Below are positions 9,163 through 62,330 of a stretch of DNA of 64,000 bases, in pieces; positions within the stretch are counted from its first letter, which is position 1, and each line of letters begins with the position of its first letter. The notes under the pieces are model-generated. The model made no database searches and was not told where the DNA came from. It worked only from the letters and a program-made list of their open reading frames with translations. The translations under genes and the position numbers were made by a program. The stretch spans positions 1 through 64,000 of IMG/VR virus record IMGVR_UViG_3300048924_000191. One strand, written 5' to 3'.

Positions 9163-9196
9163 GCATACAGCCGGGGCGAGTGCCCCGGCTGTATGC
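9163..9196. terminator. perfect 15-bp hairpin between convergent genes
   Basis: GCATACAGCCGGGGC-gagt-GCCCCGGCTGTATGC. Confidence 0.75.
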
Positions 9197-9200
9197 TGTC

Positions 9201-9398
9201 TCAGTAGAGATACCACTTCATTTCGCGAACAAACGAATACCACCCAGCTCCTGCTAAGAGTCCTGTCATGACGGCGAGGGCTAAGTGCTCCCACCACGTC
9301 GGGATGATCAATAACGCAGACCACCGCAACAACAAGATCGACAGGTAAGAAGCGGCAATCCACATCGAGTAGTAGATGGCAGCGTGAGTCAGGTCCAT
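9201..9398 (-). CDS. small two-TM membrane protein
   Basis: 65 aa from ATG 9398 with GGAGGT RBS; two hydrophobic segments. Confidence 0.55.
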   Translation of the reverse strand: MDLTHAAIYYSMWIAASYLSILLLRWSALLIIPTWWEHLALAVMTGLLAGAGWYSFVREMKWYLY

Positions 9399-32247: not shown

Positions 32248-32886
32248 ATGAAGATGCGAGAGTTAAGCGACGAAGACTGGACCATGCGGTACGTGGGTAT
32301 CGACAACGGTACCAACACCGTGGGATACGTGACGTTGGATGGAGATCTTCGTACTGGCGTAGGTACTGTTTCTCGAGCGGAGTGTTTGGTCGCAGAGAAG
32401 ACAGCGTACGATCGGTACGAGGGCCTTGCCAATAATCGTGGACAACCCGCTGCCAGGATGCGCGTTATCAAGGACTTCACTTACGAGTACATCGATGATG
32501 AAGACCCTGACGAAGTTGGCGCCGAATCTCCATTCTCGCATCTTCATGCACATTCGTTTGCGTCACTGACGACTTCGATGAATGTGTTGGATGATGCGGT
32601 GTGGCGGTACCGCCCAGCCCTGCCGTTTGAAAAGGTACCACCCGGTCGTGCCAAGAGAGCCGTCTGCCCGGAAGGACAGTACTCGAACAAAAAGGAAGAC
32701 ATTCGTAAGTTCATTCTAGCGAACCCAAACATCGTAGCCGGCGAAGGCATCGATCTGGAATCACTGTCTGAACACGAGATAGACGCCATAGCTGTAGCGT
32801 GGTATCTTTTCATGCGGACGCTTACCGTCATGCGTATGTCTGTTGCCGCAAATAACATGAGCGCCAAAAAGCGTTCACGTAAATGA
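32248..32886 (+). CDS. ruvC: RuvC-like Holliday junction resolvase
   Basis: YVGIDNGTNTVG, GAESPF (Glu), P..AKRAV, K.DI, HEIDAIAVA. Confidence 0.85.
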   Translation: MKMRELSDEDWTMRYVGIDNGTNTVGYVTLDGDLRTGVGTVSRAECLVAEKTAYDRYEGLANNRGQPAARMRVIKDFTYEYIDDEDPDEVGAESPFSHLHAHSFASLTTSMNVLDDAVWRYRPALPFEKVPPGRAKRAVCPEGQYSNKKEDIRKFILANPNIVAGEGIDLESLSEHEIDAIAVAWYLFMRTLTVMRMSVAANNMSAKKRSRK

Positions 32887-32907: not shown

Positions 32908-33318
32908 ATGAACGTGAAATCTGCTATCGGTCTGATGGCGAGGAACCCGGCGGTGGACTTTCCGTGGCAGCCGGCCCTGATCAATCTGATCAATGGTTTT
33001 GTTCCCGCGGATCGTCAGTTGGACCCACTCACCGCAGAGGCGAAGGAAGTTCAGGAAGCCATCGGCTCGATGGACGCCTCGCTGCAGGAGATGGTCTATA
33101 ATTCTAACTTGGATTCGGTCAATGTAATCGATCCTGTGCCAGCACCAGTCGCTGTGATTAAAAATAGCCGTTCTAACCTCCTGCTGTTGTTTGCCTTCAC
33201 GTTGTGCGCTTGCGCACTGATGATGGTGTGGAAGGTAGGTGACGGAGCGACCGGAGCCGATGTAGTTGAGATTCTGAAGCTGATTCTGAGTGTCGTTACT
33301 GACCAGCCTGCGACTTGA
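32908..33318 (+). CDS. membrane protein
   Basis: C-terminal TM LLLLFAFTLCACALMMVW plus an amphipathic helix; start 32887 or 32908. Confidence 0.6.
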   Translation: MNVKSAIGLMARNPAVDFPWQPALINLINGFVPADRQLDPLTAEAKEVQEAIGSMDASLQEMVYNSNLDSVNVIDPVPAPVAVIKNSRSNLLLLFAFTLCACALMMVWKVGDGATGADVVEILKLILSVVTDQPAT

Positions 33319-33326
33319 CCTGAAAG

Positions 33327-33362
33327 GCATACAGCCGGTGGCGCAAGCCACCGGCTGTATGC
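33327..33362. terminator. 16-bp hairpin with GNRA loop between convergent genes
   Basis: GCATACAGCCGGTGGC-gcaa-GCCACCGGCTGTATGC. Confidence 0.78.
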
Positions 33363-33369
33363 TGTCTCT

Positions 33370-33660
33370 TTATGTTGCAGGGTCTGCGTAGAAAGATCCG
33401 AAGAACTCTCGCTGAAGAACATCCTGAGCGTCTCGACATTTCATCGCATCGTAAAACCAAGAACTATCACCCCAGTCCATGTGTCCGATAGTCCCCACAT
33501 TGAAGTAAGGTTTACCGACGTAGAACAGGATCTTCTCTTCCTTGATCTTCGCTTGCTGCTCAGCCCACCACGTTTCCTTGTAGATGGGCTTGACCACCTC
33601 ATTTCGCGACATGTTGCCATGCAGCATCCGAAGAGCGGTGGTGAGACTTCCCCTAAACAT
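33370..33660 (-). CDS. small protein with EF-Tu G1-like peptide
   Basis: KPYFNVGTIGHMDWG versus EF-Tu KPHVNVGTIGHVDHG; 8-nt stop/start overlap with the upstream ORF. Confidence 0.6.
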   Translation of the reverse strand: MFRGSLTTALRMLHGNMSRNEVVKPIYKETWWAEQQAKIKEEKILFYVGKPYFNVGTIGHMDWGDSSWFYDAMKCRDAQDVLQREFFGSFYADPAT

Positions 33661-33835
33661 AGCGCAGAGGACGAATCGGGTCGTTGGCAGCGCGCTGTTT
33701 CACCAGCCAGTACTTGAGGATCTGGAGCGTAGATCGGGACTTCCCACAGTTACGACCACCGTGAACTATCGGGATTCGATTACCAGCCAGTTGGTGGATG
33801 GTCAGCTGCAGGATGGGCGCCTTGAGATTAAACAT
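33653..33835 (-). CDS. 60-aa protein with an isolated Walker A-like motif
   Basis: IVHGGRNCGKS; coupled to both neighbours by the same ATGTTTA(A/G) overlap. Confidence 0.55.
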   Translation of the reverse strand: MFNLKAPILQLTIHQLAGNRIPIVHGGRNCGKSRSTLQILKYWLVKQRAANDPIRPLRYV

Positions 33836-34472
33836 AGACGTTCTCCGTGCGGAAGTACTTCTCGTACAGCTCCGCGATCTTTTCCTTAGGACCGGTACCG
33901 TCCGCCTTCATTTCCGGCGAGATGATAATCACCTCATCGTGAGTGAACGGAACCGGGAAGTTCTTGACGTCAGGACGTGGATCGTCAGGATTCAGTTCGA
34001 TATCGACCTTAGCCCATGGAACGATCTTGCCTTCCTTGTTCAGGAACAGGTCGACTTCCCACTTGAACTCGATACCATTCTCGAACGAACCTGGAATGAT
34101 GAACCGAGTCTTGATCAGGCCTTGATCGGCCATCAACTTGAACTGCTCCAGCTGTTCCTCGCGAGAAGGGTCCGGTACCTCGACTTTGCCCTTATCACCG
34201 GCATTGGTCTTGGTACAGAACTCGTACTCGACGCGGTCATCTGGATGGATGGTCTTACGAACGCGCAGGGAGCCGTCTGAGGCGTTTTTAGGAGTCTTGG
34301 GTACGTAGATACCCCATTGCTCCTGACCCTCGTGGGAGACGGCCATGGACTTGATCTGCTCGACATCAAAACCCTTCAAGTAGACTTCGAGTTCGTACTC
34401 GAGATTCTTACTTTCGAATTCTGCAGTCGGTTCGTTGAACGCCAGCTGGTCAATCAGACACGGTTTGAACAT
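33828..34472 (-). CDS. CYTH / triphosphate tunnel metalloenzyme-like protein
   Basis: EYELE, LRVRK, KTRF, WEVDLF, KVDIEL motifs. Confidence 0.78.
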   Translation of the reverse strand: MFKPCLIDQLAFNEPTAEFESKNLEYELEVYLKGFDVEQIKSMAVSHEGQEQWGIYVPKTPKNASDGSLRVRKTIHPDDRVEYEFCTKTNAGDKGKVEVPDPSREEQLEQFKLMADQGLIKTRFIIPGSFENGIEFKWEVDLFLNKEGKIVPWAKVDIELNPDDPRPDVKNFPVPFTHDEVIIISPEMKADGTGPKEKIAELYEKYFRTENVYV

Positions 34473-34493
34473 GGGTAAAGTCCTCAGGACGAC

Positions 34494-34524
34494 AAAAAAA
34501 ATACGTCACCTTATTAGGGTGACG
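34494..34524 (-). terminator. intrinsic terminator
   Basis: CGTCACC-n7-GGTGACG followed on - by TATTTTTTTT. Confidence 0.75.
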
Positions 34525-34635
34525 CCGCAGACTCTCAGAAGAGAGCCCACGGGTCGTCCATCTATTCCAAGTTGGTTACTGGGATTACTCCCATCGATAT
34601 CGGTTTGGTAAGTGGGACTCCCTGACGAGACGCCC

Positions 34636-36600
34636 TTACTTGATCACACTGAGGACAAAGTTCTCAATGCGGTTCGAGAAAGGCGTAACCTCGATCAGGT
34701 AGTTGTCCGAAGTCGACAGGAGCACGCGCGCGTTCACCGAACCGGGGAGGCTGCGGCTGAGCGCTTCGAAGATCTTGCGGATGGATTGCGACAGGTTGCG
34801 CTGCTGCGCCATGGTCACGGAGAGACCCGTGTCTTGCACGTTGGCGGAGAGCACGTTGGAGAGACCCAGCTCGTCCAGAGAACCATCGACCGAGATCACT
34901 TCCAGGAAGTCCAGGAACACAACCGACGGCAGGTCGGCAGCGCCTTCGTGCAGATCACCCACGGTGTCAGCAACGTCTTCCTTGGAAGCATAGGCGCAGG
35001 CCATGCTGGTGATGTAGCGGCTGCGATCGCCGAGAAGAGAGGCGAATTCCGCACTACGGCGTTGGGCAATTACGCCCAGCAGCTGCTCGAAGTTCTTGGC
35101 GAAGTTCATCTGCTTGACGGACGCGAACTGGAACTGGTACTTCAGCGAGCGCAGAACCATTTCGGTGAAACGCTCGTTCAGCTTGTTCCAGATGGATTCG
35201 TTGAACTGAGGACGCAGGTCGTTCATGAGCTTTGCCGCTGCAACCAGAGAAGGCGCTGCAGCTACCTGATCAATCAGGTCCATCTGCGACCAGTCACTGG
35301 CGTTCATCGGCGTACGCATGTAACCCAGGAAGACGTCGACTTCTTTCTTGTCGGCCAGCATGCGAGCACGACCGGCGAAGGTTGCAGTGACGATACTGTC
35401 GACAGGACGACCTTCGGTCAGCTGTGGGATTACCGCGACGATTTCATCCAGCTTGTCAACCAGGTTGACGGACTTGGCAGGAGCAGCCGACGGTGCGTCG
35501 ACGTGGTCCAGCGTGTCGCCAGTGCTGCGGGCAGCTTTCAGGCTGACTGCGGCGGAGCGGCGTTCTGGGTTTTCTTCGCCACGAGCATCGCGGACTTCTT
35601 GGTTCAGATAGCTGTTTTCTTTGGTCACGTCTTCCAACTCCTCTCGTACATTTCCATCTGCGTCCTTCACGTAGTACTTCACATAAAGGTTAAGATCATG
35701 CCAGGACGGAATAAAGCCGGCATTATCGTCATCGTCCGATGCATGGGTACTGGTGATCTCCCACTTGCTGCGGTGAGCCACTACCCAGTGTTCGCCTGCC
35801 ACCCAGAACTCCCCGAATGGGTCGGCCTTGGTGAAGTCAGGTCCTTCTACCCGGTGCTTCTTCTGATGCACCAAGCTTTCGACCGAGTCCGGATGAGGGC
35901 GTTCATCAGAACTACGATCGCGGTCACGCTCACGTTCCCGCTCAACAGGACGCTCTTCGCGTTCTGGTTTGCGGTTATCGTCAGAGTCACCGTTGAAGCC
36001 ATCTTCCAGCTGAGTGATCAGCGACCACGGATCGGAATCATCCGCATCGGAAGTGCGACGTTTGGAATCACGGCTCTTGCGCTCGCCACGGCTACCGCTG
36101 CCGTAGTCATCACTGCTACGGTCACCACGGCGATCACCGCGGTCACGGCTACCACGACGGCTGCCACCACCGTAATCGTCACGACGATCGTCATCGCGGT
36201 CGTCTTCATCACGACGACGGCGATTCCCACGAGACGGACGGCAGACTTCGAGGAAACGCTCCTCGGCATCTTTCATCTGATCGTAGGTACGGTTGGACAG
36301 TTCATCAGCCAGTTTACGGTCGGCCAGAATGACCGACGCAAAGTGACCATCGACGATGTCTGCAATCGCATCTTCCAGGGCTTCGGCATCAGACTTGCGG
36401 TCGTCAGCGTACTTGCGGAAGATCTCACGCTCAGAGTCTGCGATCACATCGATGAGCTCATTGAAAGCAGCGCATCGCCAACCACGGTCGGACATCATCT
36501 TGTAGTACGCGTCTCGAAGATCCGAGTCTCGCGCTTTGTCCTTGATATACCTGGTAGCCTCGTCATACGCGGCATCCCAGAATTTGTTTTCTCGACTCAT
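34636..36600 (-). CDS. hypothetical protein with R/D/S/G low-complexity region (gene downstream of nvRNAP subunit)
   Basis: 654 aa, GGAG RBS, strong codon bias. Confidence 0.75.
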   Translation of the reverse strand: MSRENKFWDAAYDEATRYIKDKARDSDLRDAYYKMMSDRGWRCAAFNELIDVIADSEREIFRKYADDRKSDAEALEDAIADIVDGHFASVILADRKLADELSNRTYDQMKDAEERFLEVCRPSRGNRRRRDEDDRDDDRRDDYGGGSRRGSRDRGDRRGDRSSDDYGSGSRGERKSRDSKRRTSDADDSDPWSLITQLEDGFNGDSDDNRKPEREERPVERERERDRDRSSDERPHPDSVESLVHQKKHRVEGPDFTKADPFGEFWVAGEHWVVAHRSKWEITSTHASDDDDNAGFIPSWHDLNLYVKYYVKDADGNVREELEDVTKENSYLNQEVRDARGEENPERRSAAVSLKAARSTGDTLDHVDAPSAAPAKSVNLVDKLDEIVAVIPQLTEGRPVDSIVTATFAGRARMLADKKEVDVFLGYMRTPMNASDWSQMDLIDQVAAAPSLVAAAKLMNDLRPQFNESIWNKLNERFTEMVLRSLKYQFQFASVKQMNFAKNFEQLLGVIAQRRSAEFASLLGDRSRYITSMACAYASKEDVADTVGDLHEGAADLPSVVFLDFLEVISVDGSLDELGLSNVLSANVQDTGLSVTMAQQRNLSQSIRKIFEALSRSLPGSVNARVLLSTSDNYLIEVTPFSNRIENFVLSVIK

Positions 36601-36625: not shown

Positions 36626-38314
36626 TTAGTGACGCCGTATCGCCTCATCGATGTGCTCAACCACCGCAGCCATCGATTCCTTCTTCCGGATTGTAAAATT
36701 CGCATCCAGATCCATCGTCATGTTTGCGGTATTCTTCGCCAGCGGGCCGTTCTTCGGCAGCAGCGTGTGGTTACCGGTTTCCATAGACGACGAGTGAAGG
36801 TGAGACTGGGGATCGTTCACGTTGATGTTTTGCGGCTTACGCTGACCGGAGGTCTGCGATTGCATCACCAACCGACTGACGATCTTCGGAATGAGGTTAT
36901 CGCCCGGCGTGGACACGCTGGACATGAACGGCTTGATAGACGTTTTCCTCAAATCGAATATCTTGGTCGGCATGAAGTATTTGCCGAGGATCTTGTTGAA
37001 GTCATCGACTCCGTGCTTACGCTTACGGTTGTTGATGATCTCGAACAGACACAAGAAGATCTGCTCAAAGATATCCCGCAGGACATAAGGGGCGGTCACG
37101 AGCCGTTTCCCATACATCGATCCGATGTCGCGACTCCCGTTCTCAAGCATCTCGCTCATGTGTTGCAGAACGTAGACGAAGAGTTCGTAGAGATCTTCAA
37201 TAACCAACGCTTCTTCCTCGAACAGCATGCGTTGTGCTTCCATGTCGATATAATCATCGAGGTTCGACAGGTGGGTTTCCATGTTCTCAACCAGCTTGGC
37301 AGGACCGAGCTGATCACCAGCCAGAACATAACCCAACCACAGCAGCCACAGCCAAGTACCACCGAGTTCTTCGATGTCGGTGCGCTCTGGGAAGTGGTCC
37401 ACGATGTAGAAGAACGACGCCACGAAGGTTTGCACCAGCGGCGTGAACTGCGCACGTGGGATCACCAAAGCAATTGGCGAGCGGATGGTGGAGTACGCGA
37501 CTTTCGTCTTGAGCGTAGACGGCTTGACGCCATCAGACTCAAAGACGCAATACTTCTTGAGGTCTGGAGGATTGGCCTTGAGTTCATCGACCGTTGTGAT
37601 AGTGACATCACAGCGACCGAAGCGCTTGAAGGTTTCCTTCATTCCGTACTTCGCGAACAGGTAGTGCGGCAGCGTCGTCACGACGCGACCCAGAGCGATG
37701 GTGTCGCTCTTACCGGTCCGGTTGTTGATACCCCCGCGGTTATGAACCCAGGTATAGGCGATGTCCGTAGACAGCTGCTCCCCGGTTTCAAAAGGCTTTT
37801 CAGCCCCATAGTCGCGGTCCATCGTGACGGTACCGATCTCGTACCGGAAAGTGATAGGAGCTCGGTTTGTCCTGATGAACACCGAGTCCGGTCCAATGGA
37901 GAAGCACGGGTCTGTAGCAACCGGGCTCATTGAGAACTCCTTCCCCAGAATCCTGAAGAGGTTTCCCCGCCGTGGAGCGGGGAGGTAGAAGTATCTCGGG
38001 TACAACATTTTCCCATTGAACGCGAACTGGTATTTCACCAGGTATACGTCACTGACGGCTAGATCACTGGTCGGGACGCTGCGGTCGCCCCTCGACATCA
38101 CTGTAGCCATTACCCGGACTGCCTCCAATGGATGGCAGCGATACGACCCAATAAACTCGAAGCCTTCCGGGTAACTCTTCTCGGCACAGCGAATGCGTTG
38201 GTCGACCAGCTCTTTTGCATTGAGCAAGCTTTTACAAGCCAGCCCATCGACGATGTCCATGTTGAACTTGGGCATGTCTTCCTGCATCTCGAGATCTAAC
38301 TCAATGTCTGGCAT
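36626..38314 (-). CDS. non-virion RNA polymerase beta-subunit N-terminal fragment (phiKZ gp123-like)
   Basis: RpoB-like YFYLP....NLFRILGKEFSMSPV, D.GSMYGKRL, HLHSS; 562 aa; position two genes downstream of the capsid gene. Confidence 0.8.
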   Translation of the reverse strand: MPDIELDLEMQEDMPKFNMDIVDGLACKSLLNAKELVDQRIRCAEKSYPEGFEFIGSYRCHPLEAVRVMATVMSRGDRSVPTSDLAVSDVYLVKYQFAFNGKMLYPRYFYLPAPRRGNLFRILGKEFSMSPVATDPCFSIGPDSVFIRTNRAPITFRYEIGTVTMDRDYGAEKPFETGEQLSTDIAYTWVHNRGGINNRTGKSDTIALGRVVTTLPHYLFAKYGMKETFKRFGRCDVTITTVDELKANPPDLKKYCVFESDGVKPSTLKTKVAYSTIRSPIALVIPRAQFTPLVQTFVASFFYIVDHFPERTDIEELGGTWLWLLWLGYVLAGDQLGPAKLVENMETHLSNLDDYIDMEAQRMLFEEEALVIEDLYELFVYVLQHMSEMLENGSRDIGSMYGKRLVTAPYVLRDIFEQIFLCLFEIINNRKRKHGVDDFNKILGKYFMPTKIFDLRKTSIKPFMSSVSTPGDNLIPKIVSRLVMQSQTSGQRKPQNINVNDPQSHLHSSSMETGNHTLLPKNGPLAKNTANMTMDLDANFTIRKKESMAAVVEHIDEAIRRH

Positions 38315-62292: not shown

Positions 62293-62297
62293 AGCAG

Positions 62298-62330
62298 CAT
62301 ACAGCCGGGGCGCAATGCCCCGGCTGTATG
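62298..62330. terminator. 14-bp hairpin between convergent genes
   Basis: CATACAGCCGGGGC-gcaat-GCCCCGGCTGTATG. Confidence 0.78.

What the first reader, a model, noticed from the sequence alone, without database searches (positions are those of the whole stretch)
33653..33835. 60-aa ORF that is essentially an isolated terminase-like Walker A loop
Seen: IPIVHGGRNCGKSRSTLQIL (motif 33737-33763) gives strand-P-loop-helix in a protein too short to be an ATPase. Established: GGRxxGKS is typical of large terminase ATPases, and Avs/NLR-like STAND sensors recognise terminase, in some cases through its ATP-binding site. Inference: a possible decoy for terminase-sensing receptors, or a minimal phosphate binder. 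A chance GxxxxGKS is possible, but its position next to another P-loop-fragment ORF is suggestive.
Basis: partly seen in the sequence, partly recalled or inferred. Interest (0 to 1): 0.62.

Follow-up and report, generated by a model that had tools for sequence, protein, structure and literature searches.

The report
Conserved Walker-A micro-gene in jumbo phage
The 60-codon ORF is a real, selected gene for a very basic micro-protein with a conserved Walker-A-like loop, found only in a few uncultured root-associated jumbo phages; nothing ties it to terminase or to immune decoying, and its function is unknown.

Summary
The ORF (33653-33835, minus strand) and its motif HGGRNCGKS are exactly as described. 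It is a real gene. Two diverged orthologues (58-65% identity) sit at the same place in related metagenomic phages. Both are exactly 60 codons long. dN/dS is 0.14-0.23 and GGxxCGKS is invariant.

It is a precise 175-nt presence/absence cassette flanked by the same stop/start overlap (CTATGTTTAR). It lies between a CYTH/TTM-like gene and a conserved small gene whose product carries an EF-Tu-like NVGTIGHVD motif. Close relatives lack the cassette and join the two neighbours directly.

An exhaustive profile search found no other relatives. The terminase resemblance is sub-threshold (phrog_2 E=0.064, language-model neighbours). The phage's own terminase has a different Walker A (RQTGKS). The strand before the loop is not conserved, and folds and a co-fold were uninformative.

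The protein is strongly basic (pI about 11) and ends in an invariant 12-residue tail. My best guess, at low confidence, is a small anion/nucleic-acid-binding or partner-docking accessory subunit of its three-gene operon. It cannot be an ATPase on its own. The Avs-decoy idea has no support. This is a curious orphan micro-protein of moderate interest.

The parts
33653..33835 (-). 60-codon gene for a basic micro-protein (pI 11.4)
   Evidence: ORF. Orthologues of exactly 60 aa at L021:3826-4005 and L015:3826-4005. dN/dS 0.14-0.23, differences by codon position about 15/15/35, and this is the only frame open in all three. A 98.9%-identical strain variant keeps it, with I23M and V24I.
33737..33760 (-). 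Walker-A-like loop GGRNCGKS (residues 26-33)
   Evidence: G26 G27 C30 G31 K32 S33 are invariant in the alignment A1, with synonymous codon differences between orthologues. AlphaFold2 places it in a coil between helices 7-16 and 34-51, at pLDDT 53.
33656..33691 (-). Invariant C-terminal tail AANDPIRPLRYV (residues 49-60)
   Evidence: 12 of 12 residues are identical in all orthologues, although most codons differ synonymously.
33828..33837 (-). Junction 1, CTATGTTTAA: stop of the TTM-like gene overlaps the start of the 60-codon gene
   Evidence: A GGAG lies 7 nt upstream of the ATG (sequence).
33653..33662 (-). Junction 2, CTATGTTTAG: stop of the 60-codon gene overlaps the start of the 96-codon gene, 175 nt after junction 1
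   Evidence: Relatives L017 and L020 have a single junction (TATGTTTAG / TATGTATAG) that joins the two neighbour genes directly.
33828..34472 (-). Upstream gene, 214 aa, acidic (pI 4.8), CYTH/TTM-like by annotation transfer
   Evidence: phrog_14791, E=1.9e-24. hhalign probability 99.5% to pPa_SNUABM_DT01 PA10_00027, which its depositors annotate as CthTTM-like cd07761. No Pfam, NCBIfam or PDB sequence hit.
33370..33660 (-). Downstream gene, 96 aa, of the 'MFRGS' small-protein family
   Evidence: Homologues P0003-P0006 at 56-62% identity over the aligned part, plus shorter ones in L006-L014, always directly after the TTM-like gene.
33469..33513 (-). EF-Tu G1-like segment KPYFNVGTIGHMDWG (residues 50-64 of the 96-aa protein)
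   Evidence: V55 G56 T57 I58 G59 H60 D62 are invariant in the family. 59 of the 60 PDB matches shown are EF-Tu, aligned at NVGTIGHVDHGK. The only NCBIfam matches are four EF-Tu models, E 0.019-0.068.
33326..33363 (.). 17-bp-stem hairpin between the convergent gene sets; likely bidirectional terminator closing the operon
   Evidence: Similar hairpins occur elsewhere in the genome.
34503..34525 (-). Terminator-like hairpin plus T-run upstream of the TTM-like gene. Together with the downstream hairpin it would bound a three-gene unit: TTM-like, 60 aa, 96 aa.
   Evidence: consensus scan only.

Best explanation
It is a genuine, translationally coupled micro-gene.

Shown:
- It encodes a 60-aa, strongly basic protein under purifying selection.
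- It exists only in a small subclade of uncultured, root/rhizosphere-associated phiKZ-like jumbo phages.
- It is an exact 175-nt cassette flanked by a duplicated stop/start overlap, between a CYTH/TTM-like gene and the conserved EF-Tu-motif 'MFRGS' gene.

Inferred:
- It has a Walker-A-like loop but no Walker B, no catalytic residues and no room for an alpha/beta core, so it cannot be an NTPase on its own.
- It most likely acts as a small binding module. A glycine-rich anion-binding loop sits at the N-terminus of an amphipathic helix, with net charge of about +5 to +9, and would hold a phosphate-bearing ligand (nucleotide, polyphosphate or nucleic acid).
- The invariant tail AANDPIRPLRYV would dock onto a partner. 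The partner is possibly one of the two co-translated operon products or a host protein.
- It is an optional accessory to the conserved TTM/MFRGS pair, not a piece of the packaging machinery.
For: Gene reality: orthologues of identical length at the same position, dN/dS 0.14-0.23, third-position bias, and only this frame open in all. A strain variant has 3 silent and 2 conservative changes. An independent contig from run X4, and contig L025, carry it unchanged.

Cassette: 175 nt between two CTATGTTTAR junctions. L017, L020 and L006-L014 lack it and use one junction. The carriers (window, L015, L021) are nearest to each other by path length, in a tree that does not resolve them as a clade.

Operon: overlapping stops and starts, with terminator-like hairpins at 34503-34525 and 33326-33363.

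Motif under selection: GGxxCGKS is invariant, with synonymous codon changes.

Basic character is conserved: pI 10.9-11.6, next to an acidic upstream protein of pI 4.8.

Plausibility of function in so short a peptide: engineered 40-residue beta-(P-loop)-alpha polypeptides bind NTPs, polyphosphate and ssDNA as oligomers (bioRxiv 10.1101/2020.07.30.228619).
Against: There is no direct evidence of any ligand or partner.
- AlphaFold2 gives a low-confidence model (pLDDT 53) with the loop in a coil and no beta strand before it.
- The residues in the strand position include prolines in the orthologues.
- The co-fold with both neighbours gave no verdict, which is no evidence either way.
- The motif (6 of 8 residues invariant) is not clearly more conserved than the rest of the protein (31 of 60). 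The tail is the most conserved part, so the loop may not be the functional centre.
- No expression data cover the ORF. The one RNA contig maps inside the upstream gene only.
Confidence: 0.35

Rival explanations
1. It is a small protein-protein effector for host takeover or counter-defence. Its activity would rest on the two amphipathic helices and the invariant C-terminal tail, and the Walker-A-like loop would be a structural turn with no phosphate ligand.
For: Presence/absence among close relatives is typical of accessory genes. The tail is 12/12 invariant, more than the loop. There is no strand before the loop. Most small orphan phage proteins with known roles act by binding host or phage proteins (general knowledge).
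Against: It sits inside a conserved core block and is translationally coupled to conserved genes, not in a variable early-gene island. The invariance of G26 G27 C30 G31 K32 S33 through synonymous change needs some explanation. No PADLOC hit is shared by the orthologues.
Confidence: 0.3
2. The protein is a fragment-like mimic of the terminase ATP-binding site that serves as a decoy for terminase-sensing Avs/STAND receptors.
For: The best, sub-threshold, family hit is terminase large subunit phrog_2, E=0.064, hit by 3 of 4 members. Language-model neighbours with a Pfam label are short pieces, a minority of whose cluster members carry Podovirus_Gp16/Terminase_3. Avs systems do sense terminase and also small phage proteins (PMC11564622). 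Avs5 acts on jumbo phages (bioRxiv 10.1101/2025.07.08.663546).
Against: The phage's own terminase Walker A is RQTGKS, and the family profile finds nothing in the terminase or any other ORF of its own genome. hhalign aligns only 17 columns, at probability 5%. There are no Pfam or NCBIfam terminase hits. The R of GGRxxGKS is not conserved. The protein is predicted to lack a stable fold. The known small terminase-like protein Ksap2 triggers Avs2 rather than blocking it. Apparent tblastn hits in N4-like terminase genes are off-frame noise.
Confidence: 0.04
3. It is a helix-turn-helix-like DNA binder. CGKSRSTLQILKYWL would be a turn plus recognition helix, as in transposase/resolvase-type HTH domains.
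For: Apart from the family itself, the exhaustive profile search's next matches include a repeat protein built of units GRQCGISRSTVQKHL, which I read as HTH-like. The protein is very basic.
Against: SRST is not conserved (SVNT and SWSS in the orthologues). The segment before the 'turn' holds the invariant P22 and G26 G27, and prolines in the orthologues, and is predicted as coil rather than a helix. The match scores come from summing repeats. No Pfam HTH family hits.
Confidence: 0.08
4. It is a non-functional remnant: a frameshifted or decaying piece of a larger P-loop gene (60 aa + 96 aa once one protein), or a chance ORF.
For: Two adjacent short ORFs each carry a P-loop-like fragment and overlap by 8 nt, which at first sight looks like a frameshift split.
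Against: Orthologues keep the same stop, the same 60-aa length and purifying selection. In relatives without the cassette, the downstream gene starts at the same ATG directly after the TTM-like gene, so it is an independent gene. No locus examined holds a full-length P-loop gene here. The junction between the TTM-like gene and the 60-aa ORF is the same overlap, so it is a coupling device and not a lesion.
Confidence: 0.04

Closest known systems
N-terminal Walker-A segment of phage large terminases (PHROG phrog_2; Pfam Terminase_3 / Podovirus_Gp16 type GGRGSGKS)
   Same: A GGxxxGKS loop followed by a helix. It gives the best sub-threshold profile hit (E=0.064) and the nearest labelled language-model neighbours.
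   Different: The protein is 60 aa, with no Walker B, no catalytic glutamate, no nuclease domain and no significant model match. It is unlike the phage's own terminase loop RQTGKS, and the preceding strand is not conserved.
Engineered 'P-loop prototypes': 40-55-residue beta-(P-loop)-alpha polypeptides (Vyas et al., bioRxiv 10.1101/2020.07.30.228619)
   Same: Similar size, a Walker A loop N-capping a helix, no possibility of a full NTPase fold, and positive charge. Those peptides bind NTPs, polyphosphate and ssDNA as oligomers.
   Different: Those are laboratory constructs with a designed beta strand. This is a natural phage gene whose strand position is proline-rich in orthologues, with an extra N-terminal helix and a conserved tail. 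No binding has been measured.
Ksap2 of phage Bas60, a small protein that activates KpAvs2 (PMC11564622)
   Same: [quoted passage not shown]
Small accessory genes ('morons') inserted at gene junctions of conserved phage operons
   Same: Presence/absence between close relatives, an exact insertion at a gene boundary, and no effect on neighbouring reading frames.
   Different: It has no promoter or terminator of its own. It is threaded into a stop/start overlap that it duplicates, so it is expressed by translational coupling with core genes.

Membership tests
Large terminase subunit (TerL) | Significant match to a TerL profile (PHROG/Pfam/NCBIfam) | tested here: not met
   phrog_2 E=0.064 only; no Pfam or NCBIfam terminase model at E<=1-10.
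Large terminase subunit (TerL) | Complete ATPase domain (Walker A, Walker B, catalytic Glu, coupling motif) plus a C-terminal nuclease domain | tested here: not met
   The protein has 60 residues, only a Walker-A-like loop and a single acidic residue (D52).
Large terminase subunit (TerL) | Similarity to the genome's own TerL (as expected for a mimic or a duplicated fragment) | tested here: not met
   Own TerL (199150-201366, minus strand) has RQTGKS. The family HMM finds nothing in it. hhalign aligns 17 columns at probability 5%.
P-loop NTPase fold | Walker A motif GxxxxGK[ST] | tested here: met
   GGRNCGKS / GGNRCGKS / GGRSCGKS; six positions invariant.
P-loop NTPase fold | Hydrophobic beta strand immediately before the loop | tested here: inconclusive
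   IPIVH in the window, but MPPAY and MPTMT in the orthologues. The AlphaFold2 model has coil at 17-33, at pLDDT below 50 there.
P-loop NTPase fold | Walker B (hhhhD/E) and an alpha/beta core able to bind Mg-NTP and hydrolyse it | tested here: not met
   No such motif exists and there is no room for one in 60 residues.
Helix-turn-helix DNA-binding domain | Helix, tight turn and recognition helix with a conserved hydrophobic pattern; a match to an HTH family model | tested here: not met
   No Pfam HTH hit. The segment before the turn is Gly/Pro-rich coil, and SRST is not conserved.
Avs (antiviral STAND) trigger or decoy | Binding to an Avs sensor domain, with activation or inhibition of its effector | not testable with these tools
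   No host or Avs sequence is known for this uncultured phage. Only literature context is available.
Minimal phosphate-binding P-loop polypeptide (works-like comparison) | Binding of NTP, polyphosphate or nucleic acid that depends on the loop lysine | not testable with these tools
   Only the sequence features (loop, helix, pI about 11) are compatible.
Accessory gene cassette | Presence/absence among close relatives with exact boundaries and intact neighbours | tested here: met
   Window, L015/L016 and L021 carry it. L017, L020 and L006-L014 lack it. There is a 175-nt difference between the two CTATGTTTAR junctions.

The most novel reading that the evidence does not exclude
A natural counterpart of the engineered 'P-loop prototypes'. 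A free-standing 60-residue Walker-A-plus-helix peptide would self-assemble and bind phosphate ligands or nucleic acid. It might work together with the neighbouring EF-Tu-G1-like micro-protein and the triphosphate-tunnel-like enzyme as a three-part phosphate-handling module of a nucleus-forming phage.
Probability: 0.1. Interest if true: 0.7.

Novelty: new variant of a known kind. Interest (0 to 1): 0.35.

Why it matters
If the loop really binds phosphate ligands, this would be a natural example of a Walker A motif working outside an NTPase domain. So far that has been shown only for laboratory-designed peptides. It would also give a handle on an unstudied three-gene unit conserved next to the non-virion RNA polymerase genes of phiKZ-like phages. 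If it does not, the result is still useful in three ways:
- It shows that a 60-codon gene that one assembly's gene caller missed is under selection.
- It shows how a micro-gene can be threaded into a stop/start overlap without disturbing its neighbours.
- It shows that a terminase-looking motif alone is not evidence for an immune decoy.

Tried and rejected
- Co-fold of the TTM-like, 96-aa and 60-aa proteins, with the 60-aa protein as partner: 'no answer', ipSAE 0.01. This is not evidence for or against binding.
- AlphaFold2 monomers of the 60-aa and 96-aa proteins: pLDDT 53 and 47, too poor for fold searches, which I therefore did not run.
- Paralogue or source of the cassette in its own genome: none by tblastn, blastn or HMM.
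- Origin by tandem duplication of the 5' part of the downstream gene: a collinear comparison shows nothing. hhalign's best local match (residues 42-59 against 30-47) has P=0.04 and probability 1.3%, so the idea is not supported.
- Frameshift-split single gene: rejected (see rivals).
- A +1 frameshift fusion at GTT-TAA/TAG: considered from the sequence and thought unlikely. tRNA-Val would re-pair poorly on UUU and there is no closely spaced SD-like stimulator. This is inference only.
- Word-index protein search: found only the protein itself. The exhaustive profile search found one true cluster.
- Viral-contig hits L023/L024: off-frame, inside a minus-strand ORF.
- tblastn hits of the L015 orthologue in N4-like terminase genes: wrong reading frame.
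- Pseudomonas phage HRDY3 hit of the 96-aa protein: not syntenic, treated as noise.
- PDB profile search: only weak matches, to zinc fingers and to the RecD2 Walker A (E about 1).
- PADLOC: one weak hit (E 0.034) for the window protein only, not shared by the orthologues.
- RNA evidence: the only RNA-library contig maps inside the TTM-like gene, not on the ORF.

Full report
**Setting**

The window is the first 64 kb of a 243,378-bp IMG/VR virus record with direct terminal repeats. The ORF 36626-38314 (minus strand) is 36% identical to the non-virion RNA polymerase beta/beta' subunit of Pseudomonas phage pPa_SNUABM_DT01. It has 246 matches among jumbo phages of Pseudomonas, Erwinia, Serratia and others. 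Gene order around it matches DT01. This is therefore an uncultured phiKZ-like (chimallivirus-like) jumbo phage. Phages that encode chimallin share 72 conserved genes in seven blocks (PMC10299810, abstract seen). By its synteny with DT01 I take the region to belong to such conserved sequence. The same DNA is held by root and rhizosphere metagenomes of several studies.

**The observation**

The minus-strand ORF 33653-33835 gives a 60-aa protein that contains IPIVHGGRNCGKSRSTLQIL. HGGRNCGKS lies at 33737-33763, as stated. It is the second of three tightly packed minus-strand genes:
- a 214-aa gene (33828-34472);
- the 60-aa ORF;
- a 96-aa ORF (33370-33660).

The unit is followed by a 17-bp-stem hairpin (33326-33363) that separates it from convergent plus-strand genes (RuvC-like 32248-32886, and a 143-aa ORF). 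It is preceded by a terminator-like hairpin at 34503-34525. Both gene boundaries are the same 8-nt stop/start overlap inside a 10-nt repeat: CTATGTTTAA at 33837-33828 and CTATGTTTAG at 33662-33653. The two are 175 nt apart.

**Is it a gene?**

Yes. The word-index search found only the protein itself. The 96-aa neighbour, however, has homologues. Fetching their contigs showed two orthologues of the 60-aa ORF at the same position. One is L021:3826-4005, called as a 60-aa gene. The other is L015:3826-4005 (the same as L016), which was not called as a gene.

- They are 65% and 58% identical to the window protein and exactly 60 aa long.
- Pairwise pN is 0.24-0.29 against pS of 0.66-0.71, giving dN/dS of 0.14-0.23. 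dS is near saturation.
- Differences by codon position are about 15/15/35.
- No other frame, on either strand, is open in all three.
- A 98.9%-identical strain variant on a 12.9-kb contig of another run has five substitutions in the ORF. Three are silent and two are conservative (I23M, V24I).
- An exhaustive profile search of 1.84 billion representatives found only one further cluster, the L021 type.

The family is tiny and lineage-restricted.

**The cassette**

Relatives L017 and L020 share the flanking genes but lack the ORF. In them the 214-aa gene overlaps the homologue of the 96-aa gene through one copy of the same junction (TATGTTTAG or TATGTATAG). They differ from the window by exactly the 175 nt between the two junction copies. 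More distant relatives (L006-L014, about 50% identity in the 214-aa protein) also go straight from that gene into a 53-70-aa homologue of the 96-aa ORF. DT01 has neither small gene.

In trees of the two upstream proteins, L015+L021 and L017+L020 each pair, with moderate support. The window sequence branches separately but is nearest to L021 and L015 by path length. This fits one gain on the carriers' line, or one loss in L017+L020. Either event can be explained by recombination at the 9-10-nt repeat.

I found no source for the insert:
- There is no paralogue or DNA match in the phage's own genome.
- Descent from the 5' part of the downstream gene is not supported (hhalign P=0.04).

**What the protein looks like**

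The invariant residues are M1 F2 L4 A6 P7, H14, L16 A17 G18 N19, P22, G26 G27, C30 G31 K32 S33, W43, Q47, and the whole tail A49-V60 (AANDPIRPLRYV). The loop and the tail are kept through many synonymous codon changes, so selection acts on the protein. All orthologues are strongly basic: pI 10.9-11.6, with 7-10 K+R against 1-2 D+E. The upstream protein is acidic, at pI 4.8.

AlphaFold2, from only four sequences, gives a low-confidence model (pLDDT 53). It has helices at 7-16 and 34-51 and places the GGxxCGKS loop in a coil. The residues where a P-loop NTPase has its first strand are IPIVH in the window but MPPAY and MPTMT in the orthologues. There is no Walker B and only one invariant acidic residue. 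It cannot be an NTPase by itself.

**Terminase or not**

The best family hit is terminase large subunit phrog_2 at E=0.064. Three of four members hit it, with primase/helicase phrog_239 next. Pfam gives only AAA_14 at E=0.17, NCBIfam gives nothing, and the PDB profile search gives the RecD2 Walker A at E about 1. Language-model neighbours that carry a Pfam label are clusters of 52-63-aa proteins, a minority of whose members carry Podovirus_Gp16 or Terminase_3, at scores of 0.95-0.96. This is a lead, not a test.

Against a terminase link:
- The phage's own terminase (199150-201366, minus strand) has the T4-type loop RQTGKS.
- The family HMM finds nothing in it or in any other ORF of the genome.
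- hhalign aligns only 17 columns around GKS, at probability 5%.
- The R of 'GGRxxGKS' is not conserved.
- Apparent tblastn matches of one orthologue in N4-like terminase genes lie in the wrong reading frame.

I conclude that the loop is a generic Walker-A-like motif whose terminase flavour is unproven.

**The decoy idea**

Nothing found here bears on Avs. From the literature:
- Avs1-4 recognise the large terminase and portal, and KpAvs2 also recognises small proteins.
- One of these, Ksap2, has weak structural homology to a terminase ATPase domain, and it activates the receptor (PMC11564622).
- Avs5 senses an early jumbo-phage protein, JADA, and senses terminase only weakly (bioRxiv 10.1101/2025.07.08.663546).

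A terminase-like fragment would thus be as likely a liability as a decoy. I give the idea about 4%.

**The neighbours**

The 214-aa protein matches phrog_14791. It is homologous (hhalign probability 99.5%) to the DT01 protein that its depositors annotate as CthTTM-like, a triphosphate tunnel metalloenzyme of the CYTH superfamily. It keeps an EYExE pattern near its N-terminus. No Pfam, NCBIfam or PDB sequence match confirms the annotation.

The 96-aa protein belongs to a small family of the form MFRGS..KPIYKETWWAEQ..KILFY.GRS..NVGTIGHVD, with a variable C-terminus.
- Its segment 45-67 is the only part that matches anything known.
- 59 of the 60 PDB matches shown are EF-Tu, aligned at NVGTIGHVDHGK (best E 0.006).
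- The only NCBIfam matches are four EF-Tu models, against EF-Tu positions 5-27.
- The GKT of the G1 motif is lost in most members. One member keeps GHVDYGK.

The three carriers of the cassette also share a longer C-terminal extension of this protein, but that is one phylogenetic event. A co-fold of all three proteins gave no verdict.

**Mechanism**

Shown:
- It is a real gene under selection.
- It is an optional, exact cassette.
- It is translationally coupled in a three-gene unit.
- It has a conserved Walker-A-like loop, a conserved tail and a conserved high positive charge.

Inferred: it acts as a small binding module. The most economical reading has three parts. A glycine-rich anion-binding loop N-caps an amphipathic helix and holds a phosphate-bearing ligand or nucleic acid. 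The tail docks a partner. The peptide modulates, or adds a function to, the TTM/MFRGS pair. Engineered 40-residue beta-(P-loop)-alpha peptides show that such short sequences can bind NTPs, polyphosphate and ssDNA as oligomers.

I hold this at about 0.35 overall. Gene reality and cassette status are above 0.9. The binding mechanism itself is about 0.25-0.3. The main rival, at about 0.3, is a protein-protein effector in which the loop is only a turn.

**Verdict**

The terminase link and the decoy idea are unsupported. This is an orphan micro-protein family and an unusual variant of a Walker-A-bearing polypeptide, of moderate interest.

Noticed in passing
window 33370-33660 (-), motif at 33469-33513; homologues P0003-P0006, L006-L014: The 96-aa neighbour belongs to a small-protein family that always sits directly after the TTM-like gene. 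Its invariant NVGTIGH.D (KPYFNVGTIGHMDWG here) copies the EF-Tu N-terminal strand and G1 motif (KPHVNVGTIGHVDHGKT, recalled from memory). Nearly all PDB matches and all NCBIfam matches are EF-Tu at that spot. Why a phage conserves this segment is unexplained.
   Followed up: partly
window 33326-33363; similar copies near G000 positions 199111-199151, 75055-75092, 62297-62330 and 9163-9202: The hairpin that closes the operon belongs to a family of similar GC-rich hairpins (core CAGCCGGTGGC...GCCACCGGCTG) repeated at several places in the genome. They are probably a shared terminator type.
   Followed up: no
window 33828-34472 (-): A 214-aa acidic protein is conserved in all relatives and homologous to a DT01 protein annotated as CthTTM-like. 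No Pfam, NCBIfam or PDB sequence model recognises it. It would make a divergent CYTH/TTM candidate next to the non-virion RNA polymerase genes.
   Followed up: partly
L015:3826-4005 and window 33370-33660: Gene callers are inconsistent on these micro-genes. The 60-aa orthologue in the 190-kb contig L015 was not called at all. The 96-aa gene is on record as an 85-aa product starting at Met12, although the conserved MFRGS N-terminus and the stop/start overlap support the upstream ATG.
   Followed up: yes
window 34636-36600 (-): The 654-aa protein between the RNA polymerase subunit and the TTM-like gene has a long, highly charged low-complexity stretch rich in Arg, Asp, Glu, Ser and Gly (for example ...RRRRDEDDRDDDRRDDYGGGSRRGSRDRGDRRGDRSSDD...). 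It matches only PHROGs of unknown function, weakly.
   Followed up: no
window 33000-35000, run X6: A run filed under a named organism (coded 'organism A'), not as a metagenome, holds a 12.9-kb contig 98.9% identical to this stretch. Substitutions are denser in the two small genes (5 in 183 nt and 8 in 291 nt) than in the TTM-like gene (4 in 645 nt). It might point to the host or to a co-sequenced sample.
   Followed up: partly
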